This document shows positions 35,342 to 62,000 of a stretch of DNA of 64,000 nucleotides, piece after piece. Made by a program: the position numbers and the translations under genes. Below the pieces are notes generated by a model. That model made no database searches. It saw only the letters and a program-made list of their open reading frames with translations, and had not been told where the DNA came from. Source of the DNA: Zygnema circumcarinatum SAG 698-1b (lineage: Eukaryota; Plantae; Zygnematophyceae); assembly GCA_037447605.1 (NCBI GenBank), contig CM074807.1:3298829-3362828 (forward strand). The letters run 5' to 3'. Position 1 is the first letter of the stretch. Each line of letters begins with the position of its first letter.

Positions 35342-35461
35342 AGGACAGGGAGGAACAAGGGGTCGAGAATTCGCAGGTTTTTGGGGTTTCAACGTGTTGT
35401 AGGGTGATGAGATAGTTGAGACTTGTGAAGATAAGAAGACAGCAAGATAAGATTTTGTACA

Positions 35462-38400
35462 ATGTATGCAAATAGCTGCTGGATGGGAGGGCGTCTGCAT
35501 TGGAGGCAAAGCTGGAGAGTTCAAGAGAGGGGAGCTTGTTGGAAAGACGGAAGAAAATCTTTAGAATTACATTTGCTATCCCCAATTCAAGCTCTTTGTT
35601 CGGATCAAAATCACTCTATATGTGGAAAGGGTTTGCAGTCACCCTCGACTTTTGGGGCTTTCTCAAATTTTAGAGTTTCTAGACTGCTTAAACTCAGCAA
35701 ATACTGCTCCTACTCTGTCTCAACTGGGACCTATAATGAAAGTGGCTTTGAAACCGACCGACCTGCCACGGATAACTTTTTGAAGTTGGAAGAAGATGTG
35801 AAAGAACGGAGGGGTCCTTTTTTGTATTTTGAAGGAGTTGTGGAGGGAGGATTGGGAAAGCAGAGGCTGGATACTTATATTAGTGAGCAGATTCCGAGAG
35901 CGAGCAGAGCAAAAGTGCAGACATGCATCCGAGAAGGATATGTGACTGTGAATGGGAAGCTGCAAACCAAGGTATATGTGTGGAATATGAATGGGATTAG
36001 AAAGGTGGTTTGAGAGATCGAATTGAAATTGAGTCAAAATTTGCATTCTGTCGAAATGGATACTATCCTAATTCTGCTGTTCTACAGGCGAGCCTTAGAT
36101 TGGCATTGAGCTTATAGGAATACTTTCCAGGAGTATAGACCACTTATTCGGTTTATCACTTACTCCTAATGCTAAACACTGAGTTTTCTCCTTCTCTCTC
36201 TTCTTGCAATTTTGCTTCCGCTCTCTCTATGACCCCGTCTTTTCCACTCTCTTTTTCCTTACGATTTAAAATGTTTCTGGTTGCAGGTCTCGTACAGTCT
36301 TAGATCGGGGGAAAAAGTGGAGTGCAAGCTTCCTCCTCCTCCCCCTCTAGAAGCTGTTCCGGAGAACATTCCTATAGAAGTGGTGTACGAAGATGATAAT
36401 CTTTTAGTAGTAAATAAGCCCCCCCATCTGGTGAGTTACAATACTCGTCAGCAATCCACATAATGCAAGTTGTTTTTTCAATCACTTTTTCTAACTTTGA
36501 CATCTTGGAATACTGGCTGCATCAAGGATTAAGAAAAGTTAGACGAAATCATTACTCTCTTATCTTGGCTAGTACTACTGTACACCCTCGTCTTTTGCTT
36601 TCTGTCTAATTGACGCGACTCCTTGAGAGAGAGGAGAGGGAGAGGGGGAAAGAGAGAGAGAGAGAGACAGGGATTTGCCTTAAATTTCTTCTTTCCTATT
36701 TCCCAGGTGGTCCATCCTTCTCCAGGGCATTATAATGGAACTCTCGTGAATGCACTTTTGTATCACTGTGGGCTGCCGCCAATGCAAGTTCCGTCCGGAA
36801 ACACGTCGCAAAGAGGACTGCAAGTGCAGGAGAGGAGTCTGTTGGAGCTGCAGGGAGAGGGAGAGGGAGAGGGAGAGGGAGTAGATGAGGGAGAGGATGA
36901 GGGAGAGGATGAGGAAGCGGGAGAGGGGGAGGGAGAGGGAATCTTGCTTGCAGCAGCAACATTGAATGGACCACAACCCATAATCCGGCCAGGAATTGTG
37001 CATAGGCTCGATAAGGGAACAAGTGGCCTTTTGGTTGTCGCTAAAGTGAGTACCACTGCATTTTTTTTTTTTTTTTTTCTATCTCAATTGAATGGACTCC
37101 GTGACTCCTTTGTTAGGAAACAATCGATTTTGCATAATTTTCTCGTTGGCTTATTACCCTTTAGTCCTCGCGGTTGTTACATTGCGAATACCCTACTGAG
37201 TTTGAGCCACCGATAGGATGAGCTTGGCGAACAGGTGACATTTTGATCTGTCTAATAAGAGGTTGGGATTGTTGAGATTCTCAGGATGAGTATTCCCATG
37301 CGCATCTATGTGATCAGTTTAAGGCCCGTTCCGTCAAAAGAGCATACCTAGGCATCACATGTGGAGTGCCCTCTCCCCTTCAAGGAAGGATTGAGACAAA
37401 AATTGGACGCGATCCGAAGGATAGAAAACGGATGGCGGCCTCTACAAGTACTCGCACTATGGGTGGATATCGCTTTGCAGCTAGCAGGTGAGAGAGGGGA
37501 GAGAGAGGAGGGAGAGGAGAGAGAGGCTTTGTAAGATGTTTAGATCAAGTAAAGGTGATTGGCTTTGGCACAACATGAGCATGTTGTGGCTACTTTGGTC
37601 CCACCCAGTTATACTGCCAAGGAATGGCATGAGAGAGAGAGAAAGACAAGTGGGAGAGAGAGGGAGGAGGAGAGCGCTTTGGCTTTCGCGAATATCTTTT
37701 TCGTAAAAAGAAATGAGAAGATGTTCTCAGCGAGTTCACTCCGTATTAGGGCTGGCAACGTGTTTTTATGTCACATGATTATGTTGCTTTCTCCTGAATA
37801 GAAAGATGAGCTTTGGTAGGCGGAGTAAGAACTTAAAGTTGAAGGCATGTTTCCTGCTTGCGTGTGATCTCAGATATGAGGTGCTGCAGGCCTTAGCTGG
37901 GGGAGGGGCTGCTCTAGTGGAGTGGAGACTGGAGACTGGACGAACTCACCAGGTGCTGCCCTCTCTCTGCTTCTCTCTCTTCCAAATCTCTCTCTCTTTC
38001 TCTCTCAGCAACTTAAACCACTAAGGTATTCATCAGCTCTCATCACCTTTCTCATGAATATGAAAACATTCATTGTTTACTGTGTGGTTATAGATAGAAA
38101 TTCGCACGCTGCAACACTAGAGATTCTAGAACCCACGAGACTTTTGTGTACTTAGACCCTAAGTATCTAAGTATGTGAGCAATAGCTTCAGTTCATGAGC
38201 TGATTGTGGGAGATGTTCTGGTCTTTTGGATGCAGATTAGAGTACATGCAAAGCATGTGGGCCATCCCATTCTTGGAGATGAAATGTACGGAGGGCTCGG
38301 GAAGGCTGTGCTCGCAAAGCTCCTTCAGGCCCTGCCCGTGGGCGAGCATGGGCGGGCGCAGGCACTCATGGCCCGCCTGGACCGGCCATGTCTCCATGCA

Positions 38401-38771
38401 CGCACACTCGGGTAGGAGTCTCTCCCTCTCCCTCTCCCTCTCCCTCTCGTCCAACCCCCCACCGCCCTCACAAAGATGCTGGTCATAGAGCTGAAATGAA
38501 TGATCAGGGATCGCACTAACAGTATCATGAACTCTACGCCAAGCTCTAGAAGGCATCGTGCAGAGCATAGAGGCAACGGATGGTCTCCCCCCCACCCCCC
38601 CTGCCCCTCCCTCCCTCCCTCTCCCTCTCGATTCTCTCCTGAAAGTGCTGTGCCCCTCCCTGCAGGTTCGTGCACCCCCATTCTCAGCGAGAGCTCTTCT
38701 TCTCCGCAGAGCCTCCTTCAGACTTTGCGGAGTTCCTCGCCTCTCTGCAGGCGCTGGCTGCCCTCTCGTAG
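35462..38771 (+). CDS. RluA/RluD-family RNA pseudouridine synthase with S4 domain, probably organelle-targeted, 7 exons
   Basis: S4 domain (QRLDTYISEQIPRASRAKVQTCIREGYVTVNG), VVYEDDNLLVVNKPPHLVVHP, catalytic motif RPGIVHRLDKGTSG, LETGRTHQIRVH, HPILGDEMYG and LHARTLGFVHP. Exons 35462-35971, 36287-36430, 36707-37045, 37285-37487, 37874-37952, 38236-38411, 38666-38771. The start codon (35462 or 35483) is uncertain. Confidence 0.95.
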
Positions 38772-39545
38772 TCTGTGGGCAGTCAGCGGGCGTCGGCTTT
38801 AGACGCGGAGAGAGGGGGCTGGCATGTGGCTACTACGGAACTCATTTGAGTTTAGGGGGCTTTTGCATGCGTGATGCATTCCCGTGCCAGGGCAAACAGA
38901 GAGGAAGGGGTTTGGAGGGGAGGGGGGGGGGGGGAGAAGAGGAGGGGGAGAGAGAGGTGGAGAGATGTGATTTCTTAACGTCCCTGCAGTGACATTTCTT
39001 TCAGAGGCCATTTCTATGATGGAGATGGTCTTCATGTCCGACATGTTATCTGTGCATGAGATTGCAAGGTTTTCAATCGTAGGTAATTCTTGAAATACTT
39101 ATTTCCAAAGAATGTGTTATGGTACAACGAGCTTCTAGTTTTGAATAGGACTTTTGTTTTGGTAGCGACAATATGTCACTCTCACACAGCTGCGACTGAA
39201 GGCGCCAATTTTTTAAGCTGTGGATCCGCCTATAAGAAACAGACCAAAAAAAAGCACATTAGTGCCAGAAAACTTGTTGTGGTCGACTACATGTGAAGCC
39301 GAAGGCCAAGTTTGTGGCAGAAAACTAATCAATTGATGTTTGCCTTGTATCTCGCAAAAGGTAAATGATGAATTCGGGGGGGTGGGGTCCCACGAAAGCA
39401 GAGTGAGGAATAGCTAACTTATCCGAAACGCAAATGTAGTAAGGAATTGGAAGATTGTCACAGCAATTGTCTTTGAAGTCTTGACAAGAAAATTGGCGGG
39501 TTGATTGGAATAATGAAATGTTGAGCATTCTGGGGATGAGGCGTG

Positions 39546-42165
39546 TCAGGCGTCATGCGTCACAGGGTTCAGAAGCGCAAGAGGGCTTTGAAGCGGCTGC
39601 AGAACGGTCCTGAAAAGCAGTCTTCAATCAACCAACCCCCTCCTCCTTTGCATCAGCCCATTGCAAATGTGCTTACCTTCCCCTCCTACGAAAAAAGCCA
39701 CTGGGGTTGAAGAGTTGGGAGCCTACCCCTGCCGCTATCTTTTCCTCGATGGACCGCATGTACGGGTGGCGGAGCATGTTTTGAGCACAATTTGCCCACT
39801 GCTTCAAAGCAAAGCCGGCAGTTCTGAACATCAGATGTCAACAATGAAGCGAGCCAGTCCTTCCGCATGCAGCCATATCATAAAGATAAAAATTGGAAGT
39901 GCCATTTTACGATTCTTTTTGTGTCCCCCCATGCAGCCATTCACTGTGCATACAATACTCTGAAAAACGGGACTAGAAAGGCCACATCTTCACTTTTAAG
40001 ATATGCAGTAAGTATGCAAAAGAGTATGAATGCGGACATCATTACAGAAGGCATGGCCATGGCTCAAACCTTCACTTCCCCATTAGTCATCCTAACAGAT
40101 ATCACGTTGAACAGTGCAAGCGAAGGTTGCTAGCGATTCTGCTTTTTGGAAGAACAGCATCCAGATAGATCGAGGAGTAACACTTTCTCACATTTTTTGC
40201 GGCTACTTTGAACGCCTCTCTATGGTCCATCGTAGGATTCGCTGCCTTTATCCGAACAATCTCATCTCTGTAATAGACGACAGTTAGGACAAGAGTAGCG
40301 AAACAAACGAAATGAAGCTTACACTTTACTTATTTATTTAACCATCCGACCAGTTTCCTGTCAAGCTCCTGCTAGATATCTCAGCGGCATGGATGCATAT
40401 AACACATGTAAATGTCACACCCGAAGCAGCTATCGTTTGAAATGAAATCGCGAATTCAAAATCACAACCTATCTCCCCACGCAGGGGAGTATTAAATTAA
40501 ACATAAGTAGCTCAAGAACTTGGAGAAAGGAAAGAATCACCTGATGAAGAGATTGTAAGGTGATGGATTCCTTACTCGCTTAGCTGCACTCGTGTACAGG
40601 AGATATTCCCATAGTTAGCAGTTTAGATTCTATTTTTAGATCCTACCACTGCTATGCGTCTCCGCTATATCCCATTCTTATGCATCCTCTGCTTGAAAAA
40701 TAAATTTTGCACGAGCTGAACAAAATAGCATTACAAATCTGAAGATACCTTGAAAACCTTTCTCGAAGCCTTACCTTTTCCCCGTTCCTTCCCTGCGACA
40801 TCCACCTTAGGAGCTGCTCGACTAAGCTGCTTCGTCGACTGCTCCTCCTGCACTTCACATTCCACGGTGATCACGGGAGTCGGGGCCTGCTCCTGCTCAA
40901 GGAGCGAGCCGCTGCTTTCCTGAGCTCCACATGGGGCCAAAGGCATCATCCAAGGCGGGCCGAGATCATTGAAACCGCACATTGGAGCTTCCATCTGCAA
41001 AGTCACATACAGAACAAAAAAGTGAAGCGCTTAGACTTTAAGTCTTGATTTCTTTTCCTTCTTTTTGTTGAGCGTTCCATCATCACAACTTCGATTTCAG
41101 AAGCGGAACATCGTCACTATCATCGAAAGCGTCGCACTACCCTGAACACGAGCAATGTCCACAGACTATCGACCATTTTAACCTGAGCTGCAAGTCATAT
41201 AATCACATCATGCCTGGTGATCTTGCCCGACTATATGCTTTTTATTTTCACAAAAGTGGCGGTTTGAACGCATTCATGTTGAAAATGTCTGTCGCTCTCA
41301 GCACGGGCTCATTGTAAGGTTCGCATAATACTATCTCGTTGACCGTGCCTAACTCTGAAGCAGAAGAAAAAGTTTGAAGGTGGCATGATCGATAGATAGG
41401 TGTACCTAACCTCACCATTCCTGGAAGAATGGCATCTTCTGCGGAAGGAGAGGGCTGCAAACTGACAGCTAACAAGCTGCTGCAGTTCCCGCAGCGAACC
41501 GCCACCAAGCTCGTGTTTGCGGGGTCGGGTATGGCGACCTGCAAGAGGCCATTTCCGTAAAACGCTTCACTTTCCGTGTTTTAATACAAGTTATTTAAAT
41601 GAATGCTACTGAAACACATCCTGCCGCATATTTCAGAAAGCGCTGCTTCCTAAAGTTGCTTTCTTTATTCGAACTACAAACAAACATGGAATCACTATAC
41701 ACGGAAGTTCAGAAAACATTCATTCAAATTGCTGATGATGATTGTAATTGATACGATTTCTTAATCGCACCATTGATTTCAATCCATTCAATCTCTCGTA
41801 AAATAGAACTTCTATTTGTACTTTACCGCTGGAAAGCTTCTACACATTCAGCCTAGGCTGCCTGCATGCATGCATGCCAGCCGTCCACACAGTCTTTGGA
41901 ATATTTGCAGGATCCACAACCTCAAGAAGTACGCTGCAATAAGAGCAGTGCAGCTGAAAGGTCTCATAACAAGGAGGAGGCGAGCAAGACAGCGAACTGA
42001 TCGACGCATCAGGCGAGTCTGCAGAAGCACCAGCAGCAGCAGCCGCTCCATGGCTGGAGGAGCTCTTCTCAGCAGGACCAAGAAGGTATTGACTGAGATC
42101 CTCCAATACCTGTGAAGACCACATAATATCTCACCCAAAAACGCCACCAACAAATCTCTCGCCAT
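39546..42165 (-). CDS. YABBY: YABBY transcription factor (C2C2 zinc finger + HMG-like YABBY domain)
   Basis: Zinc finger HCSYC-X20-CGNC is split LLE|VAIP by an intron (exon ending 41921; exon 41538-41416). A linker exon lies at 40994-40775. The YABBY domain AKRVRNPSPYNLFIR|DEIVRIKAANPTMDHREAFKVAAKN|WANC is on exons 40583-40541, 40267-40192 and 39798-39677. The last exon is 39609-39546. The first coding exon and start are ambiguous; one candidate ATG is at 42165. Confidence 0.92.
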
Positions 42166-59012: not shown

Positions 59013-62000
59013 GAGGCGCCCTGCAAGGGAGGGACCAAAAACTAAACGGCTCTAATGCGACAGTTTACGGCTTGCAACACCCTGCGACGGATTTGCGAGA
59101 GAGAGATGATTGTGCTGAAATGAAGTGCTCAGCCTCTCTTGTTTTGGGCCTTTTCTTAGGATTCGCCCTGAATCGTACCGACATTTCCCACGAGTGTCAG
59201 TCGGCTCTCATTGGTCGAGGGCGACATGAGCACCTGCAAAGGCGTTGAACGAACGTTAAATCTGAACTATCCTCGTATTGCACACTGTGCAAAAGAGCGC
59301 TCTTTATCGCAGTACTGTAGTAGCTCCTTAAGATTTTCAACAGAGGGAGAGAAAGAGAGAGTGAGACCCACTGTTGAAGGTGCATCCACAAGTGAGAATC
59401 CACCGACAAAAGTGACAGTAGCTCTCCCACTAATAGGGGATGGGCCCTCCGTGACAGCTGTCACAGTCATCTGCAGCTCCCCCTTTGAGGCTTCCTCCCT
59501 TTCAGCCTTTGAACCCAAAACGGCCAAAAGGAGGTCCTCGGGAGAGGCAGGTCTGAACTCGCAGTAGTGGATCCTTGTCGCTCTGTCGTAGTAAGGGGTA
59601 CAGCTCCTGCGAGAGGGGGGGAGAGGCAGCGAGAGAGAGCGAGAGAGAGAGAGCGAAAGAGAGAGAAAGAGAGCGAAAGAGAGAGAGAGAGAGNNNNNNN
59701 NNNTAACCCTAACCCCTAACCCTAACCTCTAACGCTTAACCCTAAACCCTAACCCTAACCCCTAACCCTAAACCCTAACCCTAACCCCTAACCCCTACCC
59801 TAACCCCTAACCCTATCCCCTAACCCTAACCCCTAATCCTAACCCCAAACCCTAACCCTAACCCCTAACCCCCAAACCCTAACCCACACCCTAAACCCTA
59901 ACCCTAGCCCTACACCCTGCCACGTGGCCCGCACCCGAAGAGGACTGGAAAGCGGTATCCGGTTCGCTGCTCTTTTGGACCGTTGGAGAGCTTCGGCACT
60001 CCGGGGGGGAAGAGCACCGTGACACCTGTCACGCTCAATACGGTCGCCCGCGTGCTCACATGCACTCCGTTTCCGTTGAAACTGACTGCCAACAGAAGCG
60101 CAGCCCGCGAATGAACATAGAAACCAAATCACGAGAAAAAATCAAAAAAAGGAGACTAAAAAGGAATCATTGAATTGGAATTCGCTTTGAATTTGGGTTA
60201 CCGTATTATTCCAGAGAAGCAGGGTTTAGGGATTCAAGGTTGGGGGTTTAGGGTTTCAGGTTCAGAGTAAAAAGGTCTAGGGTTGATTTAAGGTTTAGGC
60301 TTTGGGATACAGATCAGGGCTTCCGAGTCGTTAGCATTTAGGGTTTAGGGTTGAAGAATTAGGGTCTATGGTTGAAGGTTTAGGGCTGAAAGATTAGGGT
60401 TTAGGGTGTAAGGTTTAGGGTTTAGGGTTGAAATATTTGGCTTAAGGGTTCAAGGTTTAGGGTTTAGGGCTGAAAAATCCGGGTTTAGGGTTGAAGGATT
60501 AGGGTTTAGGGTTGAAGGATTAGGTTTTAGGGATTAAGGTTCAGGGTTTAGGGCTGAAAAATTAGAGTTTAGGGTTGAAGGATTAGGGTTTAGGGTTCAA
60601 GGATTAGGGGTTTAGGGTTTGAGGGTTAGGGTTTAGGGTTGATGATTAGGGTTTAGGGTTGAAGATTAGGGTTTAGGGTTTGAGGGTTAGGGTTTAGGGA
60701 TGAAGATTAGGGTTTAGGGTAAAAGGATTAGGGTTTGGGTTCAGGTCCCATACTCAGCGCGGTCCCTTCCCCCGCGGCGCGAGCCTCTCCCGATTTGGGG
60801 TCCACAAAGAGGACACTTCCGTCGCTAGAGCGCCACTCTCCGTCCACTCGCTCTGCGGGGCGGGGCGGGGGATGGAGAAGGTTAGGGTTAGGATTAGGGT
60901 TAGGATTAGGGTTAGGATTAAGGTTAGGATTAGAGTTAGGATTAGGGTTGGGATTAGGGTTAGGATTAGGGTTGGGATTAGGGTTAGGATTAGGGTTAGG
61001 ATTAGGGTTAGGATTAGGGTTAGGATTAGGGTTAGGATTAGGGTTAGGATTAGGATTAGGGTTGGGATTAGGGTAGGCTTGGGATTAGGGTTAGGATTAG
61101 GGTTAGGATTAGGGTTAGGGTTAGGATTAGGATTAGGGTTAGGATTAGGGTTAGGATTAGGGTTAGGATTAGGGTTAGGATTAGGGTTAGGATTAGGGTT
61201 AGGATTAGGGTTAGGATTAGGGTTAGGATTAGGGTTAGGATTAGGGTTAGGATTAGGGTTAGGATTAGGGTTAGGATTAGGGTTAGGATTAGGGTTAGGA
61301 TTAGGGTTAGGATTAGGGTTAGGATTAGGGTCAGGATTAGGGTTAGGATTAGGGTTAGGATTAGGGTTAGGATTAGGGTTAGGATTAGGGTTAGGATTAG
61401 GGTTAGGATTAGGGTTAGGTTTAGGATTCGGATAAGGGTTAGGATTAGGGTTAGAATTAGGGTTCGGGTCGGTTGAACGCTGTAGGGTTCAGCATTTGAG
61501 GGTTTAGGGGCTTACCGCGTCCGCTGATGGAGAAGTTCACACGGCCTCCCACGTGGAGGGACGGATTCTGCGGATGCAGATAGTCTCCCACATGAACCTG
61601 CAGAGAGAGAGAGAGGGGGGGGGGGAGGAGGAGGGGGAGGAAGAGACAGAGATAGGGGTAAAGATGAACCCTAAAATCCTCGAAATTTTTAGCATTACTA
61701 TCATGAACCTTAAACCCTAACAATCAATAACGAAGACCTTAAATAGGTACGGCACGTTACTAAACCATGAAAGGGATTAGACCCTAATCTGGAAAGCTAT
61801 TGAAAATAACCCTAATAGTGTACCTTCTAAGAAGCCTGCGCGTTTGAAATTCCAAGACTTGAACCCAGACTTCAAACCCTCGAAAATCCCCCTAAAATTG
61901 GAATAAGCCACTAACCACAAAGTAGTCGACTATCTCTGGAAACTTGCGTGAGCGCACACGAATAATAGCCGCTCCTTGACTGCTTCCCTGTGGGAGAGAA

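What the first reader, a model, noticed from the sequence alone, without database searches (positions are those of the whole stretch)
39546..42165. YABBY gene with both domains and seed-plant intron positions in an apparently non-seed (algal-like) genome
Seen: a C-X2-C-X20-C-X2-C finger and a full YABBY domain. Introns fall at the positions I recall from angiosperm YABBYs: phase 0 after C-x2-C-x5, phase 2 at FIR|DE, a 76-nt exon, and phase 0 at KN|WA. It has divergent residues (NPSPYNLFIR versus VPSAYNRFIK; WANC versus WAHF) and an extra C-terminal exon. Established: YABBYs control lamina growth and polarity and were long thought seed-plant specific; they are absent from the model moss and liverwort genomes and have been reported only sporadically outside seed plants (hornworts, a lycophyte, a few green algae). 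Inference: shared intron positions argue for vertical inheritance from an algal ancestor and an unknown pre-leaf function.
Basis: partly seen in the sequence, partly recalled or inferred. Interest (0 to 1): 0.85.

Follow-up and report, generated by a model that had tools for sequence, protein, structure and literature searches.

The report
Leaf-patterning YABBY gene in an alga
This genome, most likely a freshwater alga closely related to land plants, carries an intact, transcribed YABBY gene (a family best known for shaping leaves and flowers) that is cut by introns at the same places as in flowering plants, so the gene long predates leaves; similar hits already sit unremarked in published count tables.

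Summary
A seven-exon, all GT-AG gene lies on the minus strand at 42124..39553. It encodes 268 aa with a C-x2-C-x20-C-x2-C finger and a complete YABBY domain. Single exons already hit Pfam YABBY_N and YABBY. The spliced protein scores 107.5 bits against a profile built only from angiosperm YABBYs.

I mapped three real angiosperm YABBY loci. All have the same intron phase series as this gene (0,0,1,2,0, plus 0 where a sixth intron exists). Three introns fall in identical alignment columns, and all share a 76-nt exon. One angiosperm gene also shares the 123-nt exon 2.

RNA-derived contigs from two studies confirm introns 3-6. Introns 1 and 2 were not seen spliced. One 8-letter overhang hints at a frame-breaking alternative donor in intron 2.

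In a small tree the gene falls outside a fully supported angiosperm clade. The host name is blinded. Indirect evidence favours a streptophyte alga, probably a zygnematophyte.

Novelty is moderate. Reviews name only Micromonas, Huperzia and hornworts outside seed plants. However, a published TAPscan table already counts YABBY-domain proteins in Spirogloea, Klebsormidium and Mesostigma.

The parts
41921..42124 (-). Exon 1 (204 nt): start codon at 42124-42122, a low-complexity N-terminus, and the first Cys pair of the finger (41947-41936). It ends in phase 0 five residues after C-x2-C.
   Evidence: An in-frame stop lies two codons upstream of the ATG. Two RNA-run contigs end at 41920 and 41922, right at the predicted donor. 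The intron position is identical to three angiosperm genes.
41416..41538 (-). Exon 2 (123 nt): the second half of the zinc finger (VRCGNC; Cys pair at 41493-41482) and the start of the linker.
   Evidence: On its own it hits Pfam PF24868 YABBY_N at 27.6 bits, E 2.1e-6. It has the same 123-nt length as exon 2 of the Oryza meyeriana YAB2-type gene. Its splicing was not seen directly.
41406..41415 (-). Ten nucleotides that would be added to exon 2 if the alternative donor (TTAG|GTACAC) is used. This shifts the frame to a stop nine codons into exon 3, leaving a finger-only product of about 120 aa.
   Evidence: An 8-letter loose end on run X7 record 11 (reverse complement GTGAGGTT) abuts the exon 3 acceptor. 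The frame consequence was computed. This is weak evidence from a single contig.
40775..40994 (-). Exon 3 (220 nt): a non-conserved linker ending in a basic stretch. It ends in phase 1.
   Evidence: Its 3' junction 40775|40583 is seen in run X11 record 4. Its acceptor at 40994 is supported by X7 record 11.
40541..40583 (-). Exon 4 (43 nt): the start of the YABBY domain (KRVRNPSPYNLFI plus two bases of the Arg codon).
   Evidence: Both junctions are seen in run X11 record 4. Angiosperm genes have a 49-nt exon here with the same phases, so intron 3 sits two codons closer to the domain in this gene.
40192..40267 (-). Exon 5 (76 nt): the core of the YABBY domain (DEIVRIKAANPTMDHREAFKVAAKN).
   Evidence: On its own it hits Pfam PF04690 YABBY at 40.7 bits, E 3e-10, above the 28.6 cut-off. 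It has the same 76-nt length and phases as the three angiosperm loci and the environmental contig L001. Its junctions are seen in X11 record 4 and X17 record 7.
39727..39798 (-). Exon 6 (72 nt): the end of the YABBY domain (WANC...) and the start of the C-terminal tail.
   Evidence: Junctions 40192|39798 and 39727|39621 are seen in run X17 record 7. Angiosperm FIL-type genes have 75-78 nt here, also phase 0 on both sides.
39553..39621 (-). Exon 7, coding part (66 nt plus the stop at 39555-39553): a non-conserved tail. The 3' UTR runs on to at least 39507.
   Evidence: It corresponds in phase and size to the optional seventh exon of FIL-type angiosperm genes (69 nt).
42163..42165 (-). An upstream ATG in good context, out of frame with the finger. 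It opens a 105-codon frame that overlaps exon 1 and may be an upstream ORF.
   Evidence: RNA-run contig X7 record 13 reaches 42170. The transcription start was not determined.

Best explanation
This is a functional, transcribed, vertically inherited member of the YABBY transcription-factor family in a non-seed green-lineage genome, most likely a streptophyte (zygnematophyte) alga.

Shown:
- One polypeptide carries the N-terminal C2C2 zinc finger and the C-terminal YABBY domain, in the same order and spacing as in flowering plants.
- The gene is interrupted at the same codon positions and phases as flowering-plant YABBY genes.
- Spliced RNA exists.

Inferred from what is established for the family:
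- The HMG-like YABBY domain binds DNA.
- The finger mediates dimerisation or partner contacts.
- The protein regulates transcription together with Groucho-type co-regulators (LEUNIG/SEUSS), which are reported across the green lineage.

Its biological role in an organism without leaves is unknown. My best guess is control of a developmental or life-cycle switch, not organ polarity.
For: - **Gene model:** seven GT-AG exons and an open frame of 268 aa.
- **Pfam on single exons:** PF04690 at 40.7 bits, above the cut-off, and PF24868 at 27.6 bits.
- **Full-length similarity:** E about 1e-28 to full-length angiosperm YABBYs across finger plus domain.
- **Profile score:** 107.5 bits as one envelope on an angiosperm-only profile. 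Shuffled controls reach 4.4 bits at most. The protein keeps 44 of 73 angiosperm near-invariant positions, including all four cysteines.
- **Intron plan:** identical phase series to three mapped angiosperm loci. Introns 1, 4 and 5 fall in identical columns, and the 76-nt exon is shared.
- **Expression:** spliced contigs from two studies confirm introns 3-6.
- **Placement:** outside a 100/98 angiosperm clade and a 100/99 marine green-algal-type clade.
- **Locus context:** six DNA runs from three studies hold the locus completely. It is flanked by ordinary genes, including a pseudouridine synthase and BRCA2.
- **Domain type:** the nearest solved relatives of the YABBY domain are the HMG boxes of TFAM.
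- **Partners:** LEUNIG/SEUSS are reported from streptophyte algae (PMC13395540).
Against: - Introns 1 and 2 were not seen as spliced junctions.
- The only junction-like signal at intron 2 points to a donor 10 nt downstream, which breaks the frame.
- The protein was not found in any protein database searched, so no independent annotation supports the model.
- The host's name is hidden and its algal nature rests on indirect evidence.
- The tree lacks hornwort, lycophyte and gymnosperm sequences and leaves this gene on a long unresolved branch.
- No functional data exist.
Confidence: 0.8

Rival explanations
1. The host is not an alga but a land plant in which a YABBY gene is already known (a hornwort or a homosporous lycophyte). 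The gene would then be real but already described.
For: Hornworts have compact genomes and a single YABBY gene (PMC8075897). The intron plan of the Huperzia gene is reported to resemble that of Arabidopsis (PMC5622374). I could not name the host.
Against: Earlier follow-ups on other pieces of this genome report a selenoprotein, a cytoplasmic dynein-1 heavy chain, and families shared only with zygnematophytes, Closterium and Mesotaenium (unchecked leads). Run-contig totals of 69-89 Mb and a window more than 2 Mb into its piece fit the 71-Mb, 20-chromosome Zygnema circumcarinatum assembly. The domain shares the PSPYN-FIR signature with the marine algal group and not with angiosperms.
Confidence: 0.1
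2. The locus mainly produces a truncated, finger-only product or a transcript destined for decay, because intron 2 is spliced at the donor 10 nt downstream. The full-length YABBY protein would then be minor or absent.
For: The 8-letter loose end on X7 record 11 matches the first 8 nt beyond my exon 2 and abuts the exon 3 acceptor. That junction leads to a stop after nine codons.
Against: This is a single low-depth contig with an 8-nt overhang. The in-frame donor ATG|GTGAGG is a good site. It gives a 123-nt exon 2, the same length as in an angiosperm YAB2-type gene. Exons 3-7 keep an open frame with conserved residues and are correctly spliced, which implies selection on the full-length protein.
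Confidence: 0.1
3. The gene is contamination from, or a recent transfer from, a seed plant.
For: The intron plan is very like that of seed plants.
Against: Overall identity to angiosperm YABBYs is only 33-40%. The gene is excluded from the angiosperm clade at 100/98 support. It sits inside a long chromosome-scale piece among host genes with matching composition. It is held at 100% by DNA runs from three studies and by RNA runs of the same species label.
Confidence: 0.02

Closest known systems
Angiosperm FIL/YAB3-type YABBY genes (for example the Tripterygium wilfordii gene for P0107 and the Spirodela intermedia gene for P0129)
   Same: Both have seven exons with start phases 0,0,0,1,2,0,0 and a 76-nt fifth exon. 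Introns in the finger, at FI(K/R)|DE and at AAKN|W fall in identical columns. The finger spacing C-x2-C-x20-C-x2-C is the same. 44 of 73 near-invariant residues are kept.
   Different: The N-terminus before the finger is long (59 aa). Intron 3 sits two codons nearer the domain (43-nt versus 49-nt exon). The gene has NPSPYNLFIR and WANC where angiosperms have VPSAYNRFIK and WAHF. The HFPHIHFGL motif after the domain is absent and the tail cannot be aligned. Overall identity is 33-40%.
Mamiellales-type (Micromonas/Ostreococcus) YABBY, represented here by the marine environmental proteins P0174-P0188
   Same: Both have the two-domain architecture with YABBY_N plus YABBY and the shared P(S/E)PSPYN-FIR-EI-R-K signature.
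   Different: The marine genes are intronless where I could see the gene call (1,281 nt for 426 aa), GC-rich, about 400 aa long with long linkers, and score lower on the angiosperm profile (70-77 versus 107.5 bits). Their assignment to Mamiellales is my inference from the literature and from their Tara/MGnify origin.
Hornwort (Anthoceros) and lycophyte (Huperzia) YABBY genes
   Same: These are single-copy YABBY genes outside seed plants. The Huperzia gene is reported to have an Arabidopsis-like exon-intron structure (PMC5622374; PMC8075897).
   Different: I had no sequences of these to compare. If the host is an alga, this gene extends the same picture one node deeper, below the origin of land plants.
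HMG-box proteins and finger-less YABBY-domain proteins (P0001-P0006, P0172, and P0191 from the chytrid Clydaea vesicula)
   Same: They share the helix-loop-helix core (SxYN-F...E....K..NP...H.EAF..AA.NW). The nearest solved structures are the TFAM HMG boxes.
   Different: Those proteins lack the zinc finger and often carry two to four tandem copies of the domain. This gene has one domain behind a finger.

Membership tests
YABBY (C2C2-YABBY) transcription factors | N-terminal zinc finger with C-x2-C-x20-C-x2-C spacing (Pfam PF24868 YABBY_N) | tested here: met
   Residues 60-87 have exactly this spacing. Exon 2 alone, which is half the domain, scores 27.6 bits, E 2.1e-6, against a 28.6 cut-off. 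The finger aligns column for column with angiosperm fingers.
YABBY (C2C2-YABBY) transcription factors | C-terminal YABBY domain (Pfam PF04690) | tested here: met
   Exon 5 alone (25 aa) scores 40.7 bits, E 3e-10, above the 28.6 cut-off. The full domain is residues 184-226.
YABBY (C2C2-YABBY) transcription factors | Both domains in one polypeptide, finger first, collinear with canonical members | tested here: met
   A single 107.5-bit envelope covers profile positions 11-174 of an angiosperm-only HMM, and shuffles reach 4.4 bits at most. BLASTP gives E about 1e-28 over residues 30-225.
YABBY (C2C2-YABBY) transcription factors | Conserved intron plan: one intron in the finger, one in the linker, three in or at the YABBY domain, and an optional sixth downstream (PMC8074164) | tested here: met
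   Three angiosperm loci were mapped exactly. The phase series is identical. Introns 1, 4 and 5 fall in identical columns. Intron 3 is offset by two codons in the same phase. Introns 2 and 6 have the same phase in regions that cannot be aligned.
YABBY (C2C2-YABBY) transcription factors | Transcribed and spliced into the predicted mRNA | tested here: inconclusive
   Introns 3, 4, 5 and 6 are confirmed by contigs from runs X11 and X17, from two studies. Introns 1 and 2 were not seen spliced. There is a hint of a frame-breaking alternative donor in intron 2.
YABBY (C2C2-YABBY) transcription factors | Groups with land-plant YABBYs in a phylogeny | tested here: inconclusive
   The gene is outside the angiosperm clade (100/98) and outside the marine clade (100/99), on a long branch in an unresolved trichotomy with P0173. 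No hornwort, lycophyte or gymnosperm sequences were available.
YABBY (C2C2-YABBY) transcription factors | Sequence-specific DNA binding and interaction with LEUNIG/SEUSS-type co-regulators | not testable with these tools
   This rests only on inference from angiosperm work cited in PMC13395540 and PMC8074164.
HMG-box superfamily | Three-helix L-shaped HMG fold | not tested
   Only remote sequence similarity between an angiosperm YABBY domain and the TFAM HMG boxes was seen (E 2.5e-4). The spliced protein has no reference, so I did not fold it.

The most novel reading that the evidence does not exclude
The complete seven-exon plan, including the 'optional' sixth intron downstream of the YABBY domain, was already fixed in the common ancestor of this alga and land plants. 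The FIL-type seven-exon structure would then be ancestral and the six-exon YAB2 type a later intron loss. That is the opposite of the inference repeated in the 2021 review (PMC8074164). If the host is Zygnema circumcarinatum, for which the published TAPscan count is 0, this would also be a gene missed by the annotation of the algal sister lineage of land plants.
Probability: 0.35. Interest if true: 0.6.

Novelty: new member of a known kind. Interest (0 to 1): 0.5.

Why it matters
YABBY genes are a textbook example of regulators tied to leaves, carpels and ovule integuments. Reviews still list only Micromonas, Huperzia and hornworts as holders outside seed plants. A canonical, expressed, two-domain YABBY in a culturable streptophyte alga, with the same exon-intron plan as flowering plants, has three consequences. 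It shows that the whole gene, not just the domain, predates land plants. It strengthens the case for repeated loss in mosses, liverworts, Selaginella and ferns. It also gives an organism without leaves in which the ancestral role can be tested by knock-out, expression profiling and binding-site mapping. The advance is modest because bulk surveys already count YABBY-domain proteins in some streptophyte algae and place the family's origin deep in the green or red-green lineage.

Tried and rejected
1. **Whole-protein searches:** the spliced protein has no reference and is too long to type. I therefore ran no whole-protein Pfam scan, no structure prediction and no direct whole-protein database search, and used exon references and local scripts instead.
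2. **Exhaustive HMMER search with a 31-aa exon-5 stretch:** it found 52 hits but no copy of this protein.
3. **Profile search seeded with P0048 plus exon rows:** the results were swamped by angiosperm FIL/YAB3 proteins.
4. **Region-restricted search with P0016:** it found only the query itself, so that search was wasted.
5. **Alignment A2:** finger and linker exons were forced onto the YABBY columns, so I discarded it in favour of A3.
6. **Host look-ups:** two single-exon ORFs of the window were looked up to expose the source record and nothing was on record. Rfam found nothing in the window.
7. **Start codon:** I tested whether the ATG at 42165 could be brought into frame by a small 5' intron. 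The only GT..AG pair is 25 nt long and gives a stop, so I rejected it.
8. **Intron 3:** I tested whether an in-frame alternative acceptor could give a 49-nt exon 4 as in angiosperms. The nearest upstream AG adds 5 nt, not 6, and the RNA contig shows 40775|40583, so I rejected it.
9. **Literature:** a multi-term search ranked badly and yielded nothing useful. The 'Charophytes' entry in Table 1 of PMC9880897 is not backed by its own sequence list, which has algal YABs only from Micromonas and Ostreococcus.
Full report
**What is there.** I built an explicit model and corrected its 3' end using RNA evidence. The exons are 42124-41921, 41538-41416, 40994-40775, 40583-40541, 40267-40192, 39798-39727 and 39621-39553. 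All six introns are GT..AG. They are 105-421 nt long with 39-51% GC. The frame is open for 268 aa. Residues 60-87 form a C-x2-C-x20-C-x2-C finger, and residues 184-226 form the YABBY domain. tblastn finds no second copy in the window.

**Family membership.** The spliced protein has no reference, so I tested single exons.
- Exon 5 alone (25 aa) hits Pfam PF04690 (YABBY, C-terminal) at 40.7 bits, E 3e-10, above the 28.6 cut-off.
- Exon 2 alone (half the finger) hits PF24868 (YABBY_N) at 27.6 bits, E 2.1e-6.
- The protein assembled in a script from window.fa aligns with full-length angiosperm YABBYs from finger to domain at E about 1e-28.
- Against a profile built only from 119 angiosperm YABBYs it scores 107.5 bits as a single envelope covering profile positions 11-174. 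Two hundred shuffles reach at most 4.4 bits.
- It keeps 44 of the 73 positions that are at least 95% invariant in those angiosperms. These include all four cysteines, VRCG-C, PS-YN-FI, EI-RIKA-NP, HREAF and AAKNWA.

**Intron positions, tested against real loci.** I fetched three angiosperm YABBY loci and mapped their proteins exactly onto the DNA.

| Gene | Exon lengths (nt) | Start phases |
|---|---|---|
| Tripterygium wilfordii (L004) | 96/156/166/49/76/78/69 | 0,0,0,1,2,0,0 |
| Spirodela intermedia (L005) | 102/159/121/49/76/75/69 | 0,0,0,1,2,0,0 |
| Oryza meyeriana YAB2-type (L006) | 75/123/127/49/76/108 | 0,0,0,1,2,0 |
| This gene | 204/123/220/43/76/72/69 | 0,0,0,1,2,0,0 |

On the residue alignment:
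- Intron 1 (five residues after the first C-x2-C), intron 4 (inside the K/R codon of FI(K/R)|DE) and intron 5 (after AAKN) fall in identical columns.
- Intron 3 has the same phase but lies two codons nearer the domain.
- Introns 2 and 6 have the same phase in regions that cannot be aligned.
- Exon 2 has the same 123-nt length as in the rice-relative gene.
- Exons 6 and 7 are within two codons of the FIL-type lengths.

A rough estimate of the chance of three or more exact coincidences in about 270 alignable nucleotides is 5e-6. This matches the plan given in the 2021 review: one intron in the finger, one in the linker, three in the YABBY domain and an optional sixth (PMC8074164). There is indirect support too. 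Dozens of public angiosperm 'proteins' returned by the exhaustive search are mis-called fragments that read through introns exactly at R|DEIQRIK and AAKN|V. An unrelated environmental contig (L001) has the same phase-2 break, the same 76-nt exon and the same phase-0 break, while sharing no DNA similarity with the window. Another relative (L002) lacks the intron at FVR|DE.

**Expression.** Six DNA runs from three studies hold the whole locus. Thirteen further runs of the same species label hold part of it. I laid four of these.
- Run X11 has one contig joining 40775|40583 and 40541|40267.
- Run X17, from a different study, has one contig joining 40192|39798 and 39727|39621.
- Introns 1 and 2 were not seen as junctions.
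- Two contigs stop within a base of the exon 1 donor.
- Runs X7 and X8 also cover introns, which could be pre-mRNA or DNA.
- One X7 contig ends at the exon 3 acceptor with an 8-letter overhang that matches the first 8 nt after my exon 2. This implies a donor 10 nt downstream, which would shift the frame to a stop.

This is a single weak observation. The shared 123-nt exon 2 and the conserved open frame through exons 3-7 favour the in-frame donor.

**Start codon.** An RNA contig reaches 42170, so it may act as an upstream ORF.

**Relatives.** This protein was not found in either protein collection.
- The closest full-length relative is P0173 (459 aa; E 3e-20). It comes from a single intron-free run-derived contig, i.e. 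a transcript. By my recollection the run accession is a marine metatranscriptome.
- A GC-rich group (P0174-P0188) has both Pfam domains. It occurs in Tara and MGnify catalogues on contigs of up to 1.5 Mb and, where visible, is intronless. I take these to be the Micromonas/Ostreococcus-type YABBYs known from the literature, but no organism names were given.
- Finger-less proteins with one to four YABBY-like repeats also turned up, one of them from a chytrid. The domain is therefore older and wider than the finger-plus-domain architecture.
- In a tree of 28 sequences, angiosperms form a clade (100/98) that excludes this gene. The marine group forms another clade (100/99). This gene and P0173 sit unresolved between them on long branches.
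- This gene scores higher on the angiosperm profile than the marine proteins do (107.5 versus 61-77 bits). That is what one expects of a streptophyte orthologue.

**Host.** Names are coded. The evidence is indirect.
- All runs carry one species label and come from about ten studies between 2017 and 2025.
- DNA-run contig totals are 69-89 Mb for five of the six runs.
- The window lies more than 2 Mb into its piece, and notes exist on 63 pieces.
- These figures fit Zygnema circumcarinatum: 71 Mb, 20 pseudo-chromosomes, N50 4 Mb, 90 scaffolds (PMC11096116).
- Earlier follow-ups elsewhere in this genome report a selenoprotein, a dynein-1 heavy chain, KAI2, and families shared only with zygnematophytes, Closterium and Mesotaenium. 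These are unchecked leads.

I put a streptophyte alga at about 0.8 and a zygnematophyte at about 0.65. A hornwort is the main alternative.

**Surroundings.** On the plus strand at about 35.4-39.4 kb lies an S4-domain pseudouridine synthase gene. Its well-covered 3' end (about 39422) converges on the YABBY 3' end. BRCA2 repeats lie at 52.7-54.9 kb. Composition is uniform across the window.

**Mechanism.** No YABBY structure has been solved. The nearest solved relatives by sequence are the HMG boxes of TFAM. By inference from the family, the domain binds DNA in the manner of an HMG box, the finger mediates self- or partner association, and the protein works with LEUNIG/SEUSS-type co-regulators. 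A 2026 study traces those co-regulators through streptophyte algae (PMC13395540). None of this was tested here.

**Novelty.**
- Reviews and recent papers name only Micromonas, Huperzia and Anthoceros outside seed plants.
- A 2023 BLASTP survey that included Chlorokybus, Coleochaete and Klebsormidium listed algal YABs only from Micromonas and Ostreococcus.
- But the TAPscan table in the Zygnema genome paper counts C2C2_YABBY as 1 in Spirogloea, 1 in Klebsormidium, 2 in Mesostigma and 0 in Z. circumcarinatum, Penium, Chara and Chlorokybus.
- PharaohFUN places the orthogroup at the Archaeplastida root.
- No paper in the library discusses those algal hits in its text.

So the family's presence in streptophyte algae is already recorded, though without comment. 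What I did not find described is a canonical two-domain gene with the full flowering-plant intron plan and RNA support.

Noticed in passing
P0001-P0006, P0008, P0011, P0017, P0020, P0172, P0191 (proteins): Finger-less proteins carry one to four tandem YABBY-like (HMG-like) repeats, mostly from environmental data. One single-domain example is from the chytrid Clydaea vesicula. The YABBY C-terminal domain is therefore not confined to plants; only the finger-plus-domain architecture looks specific to the green lineage.
   Followed up: partly
window 42163-42165, minus strand: An upstream ATG in a good context, out of frame with the YABBY frame, opens a 105-codon ORF that overlaps exon 1. An RNA-run contig reaches 42170, so it may be an upstream ORF that limits translation.
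   Followed up: no
window 41406-41415, minus strand: A possible alternative 5' splice site lies 10 nt downstream of the in-frame donor of intron 2. It is seen only as an 8-letter overhang in one contig. It would give a finger-only product of about 120 aa or a decay target.
   Followed up: partly
window about 35460-39420, plus strand: A multi-exon gene with an S4 domain and an RluA-type pseudouridine synthase domain. Its well-covered 3' end converges on the YABBY 3' end, with roughly 100 nt between them.
   Followed up: partly
window 59704-61464: Interstitial telomere-like arrays in both orientations mix TTAGGG-type and TTTAGGG-type units, including a 12-nt TTAGGGTTAGGA array of about 49 copies.
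   Followed up: no
P0009-P0052: Many public angiosperm 'proteins' of 36-190 aa are mis-called gene fragments that read straight through the introns flanking the 76-nt YABBY exon (for example ...CRDEIQRIK...AAKNVRS...). This is a recurrent annotation artefact for this family.
   Followed up: no
L002:1290-1448: An environmental relative (P0007) has the YABBY domain uninterrupted at FVR|DE. It has therefore lost, or never had, the phase-2 intron that this gene shares with angiosperms.
   Followed up: no
PMC9880897, Table 1 versus text and Supplementary Table 2: The paper's table gives 'Charophytes' as the first occurrence of INO/YAB homologues. Its text says chlorophytes, and its sequence list has algal YABs only from Micromonas and Ostreococcus.
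   Followed up: yes
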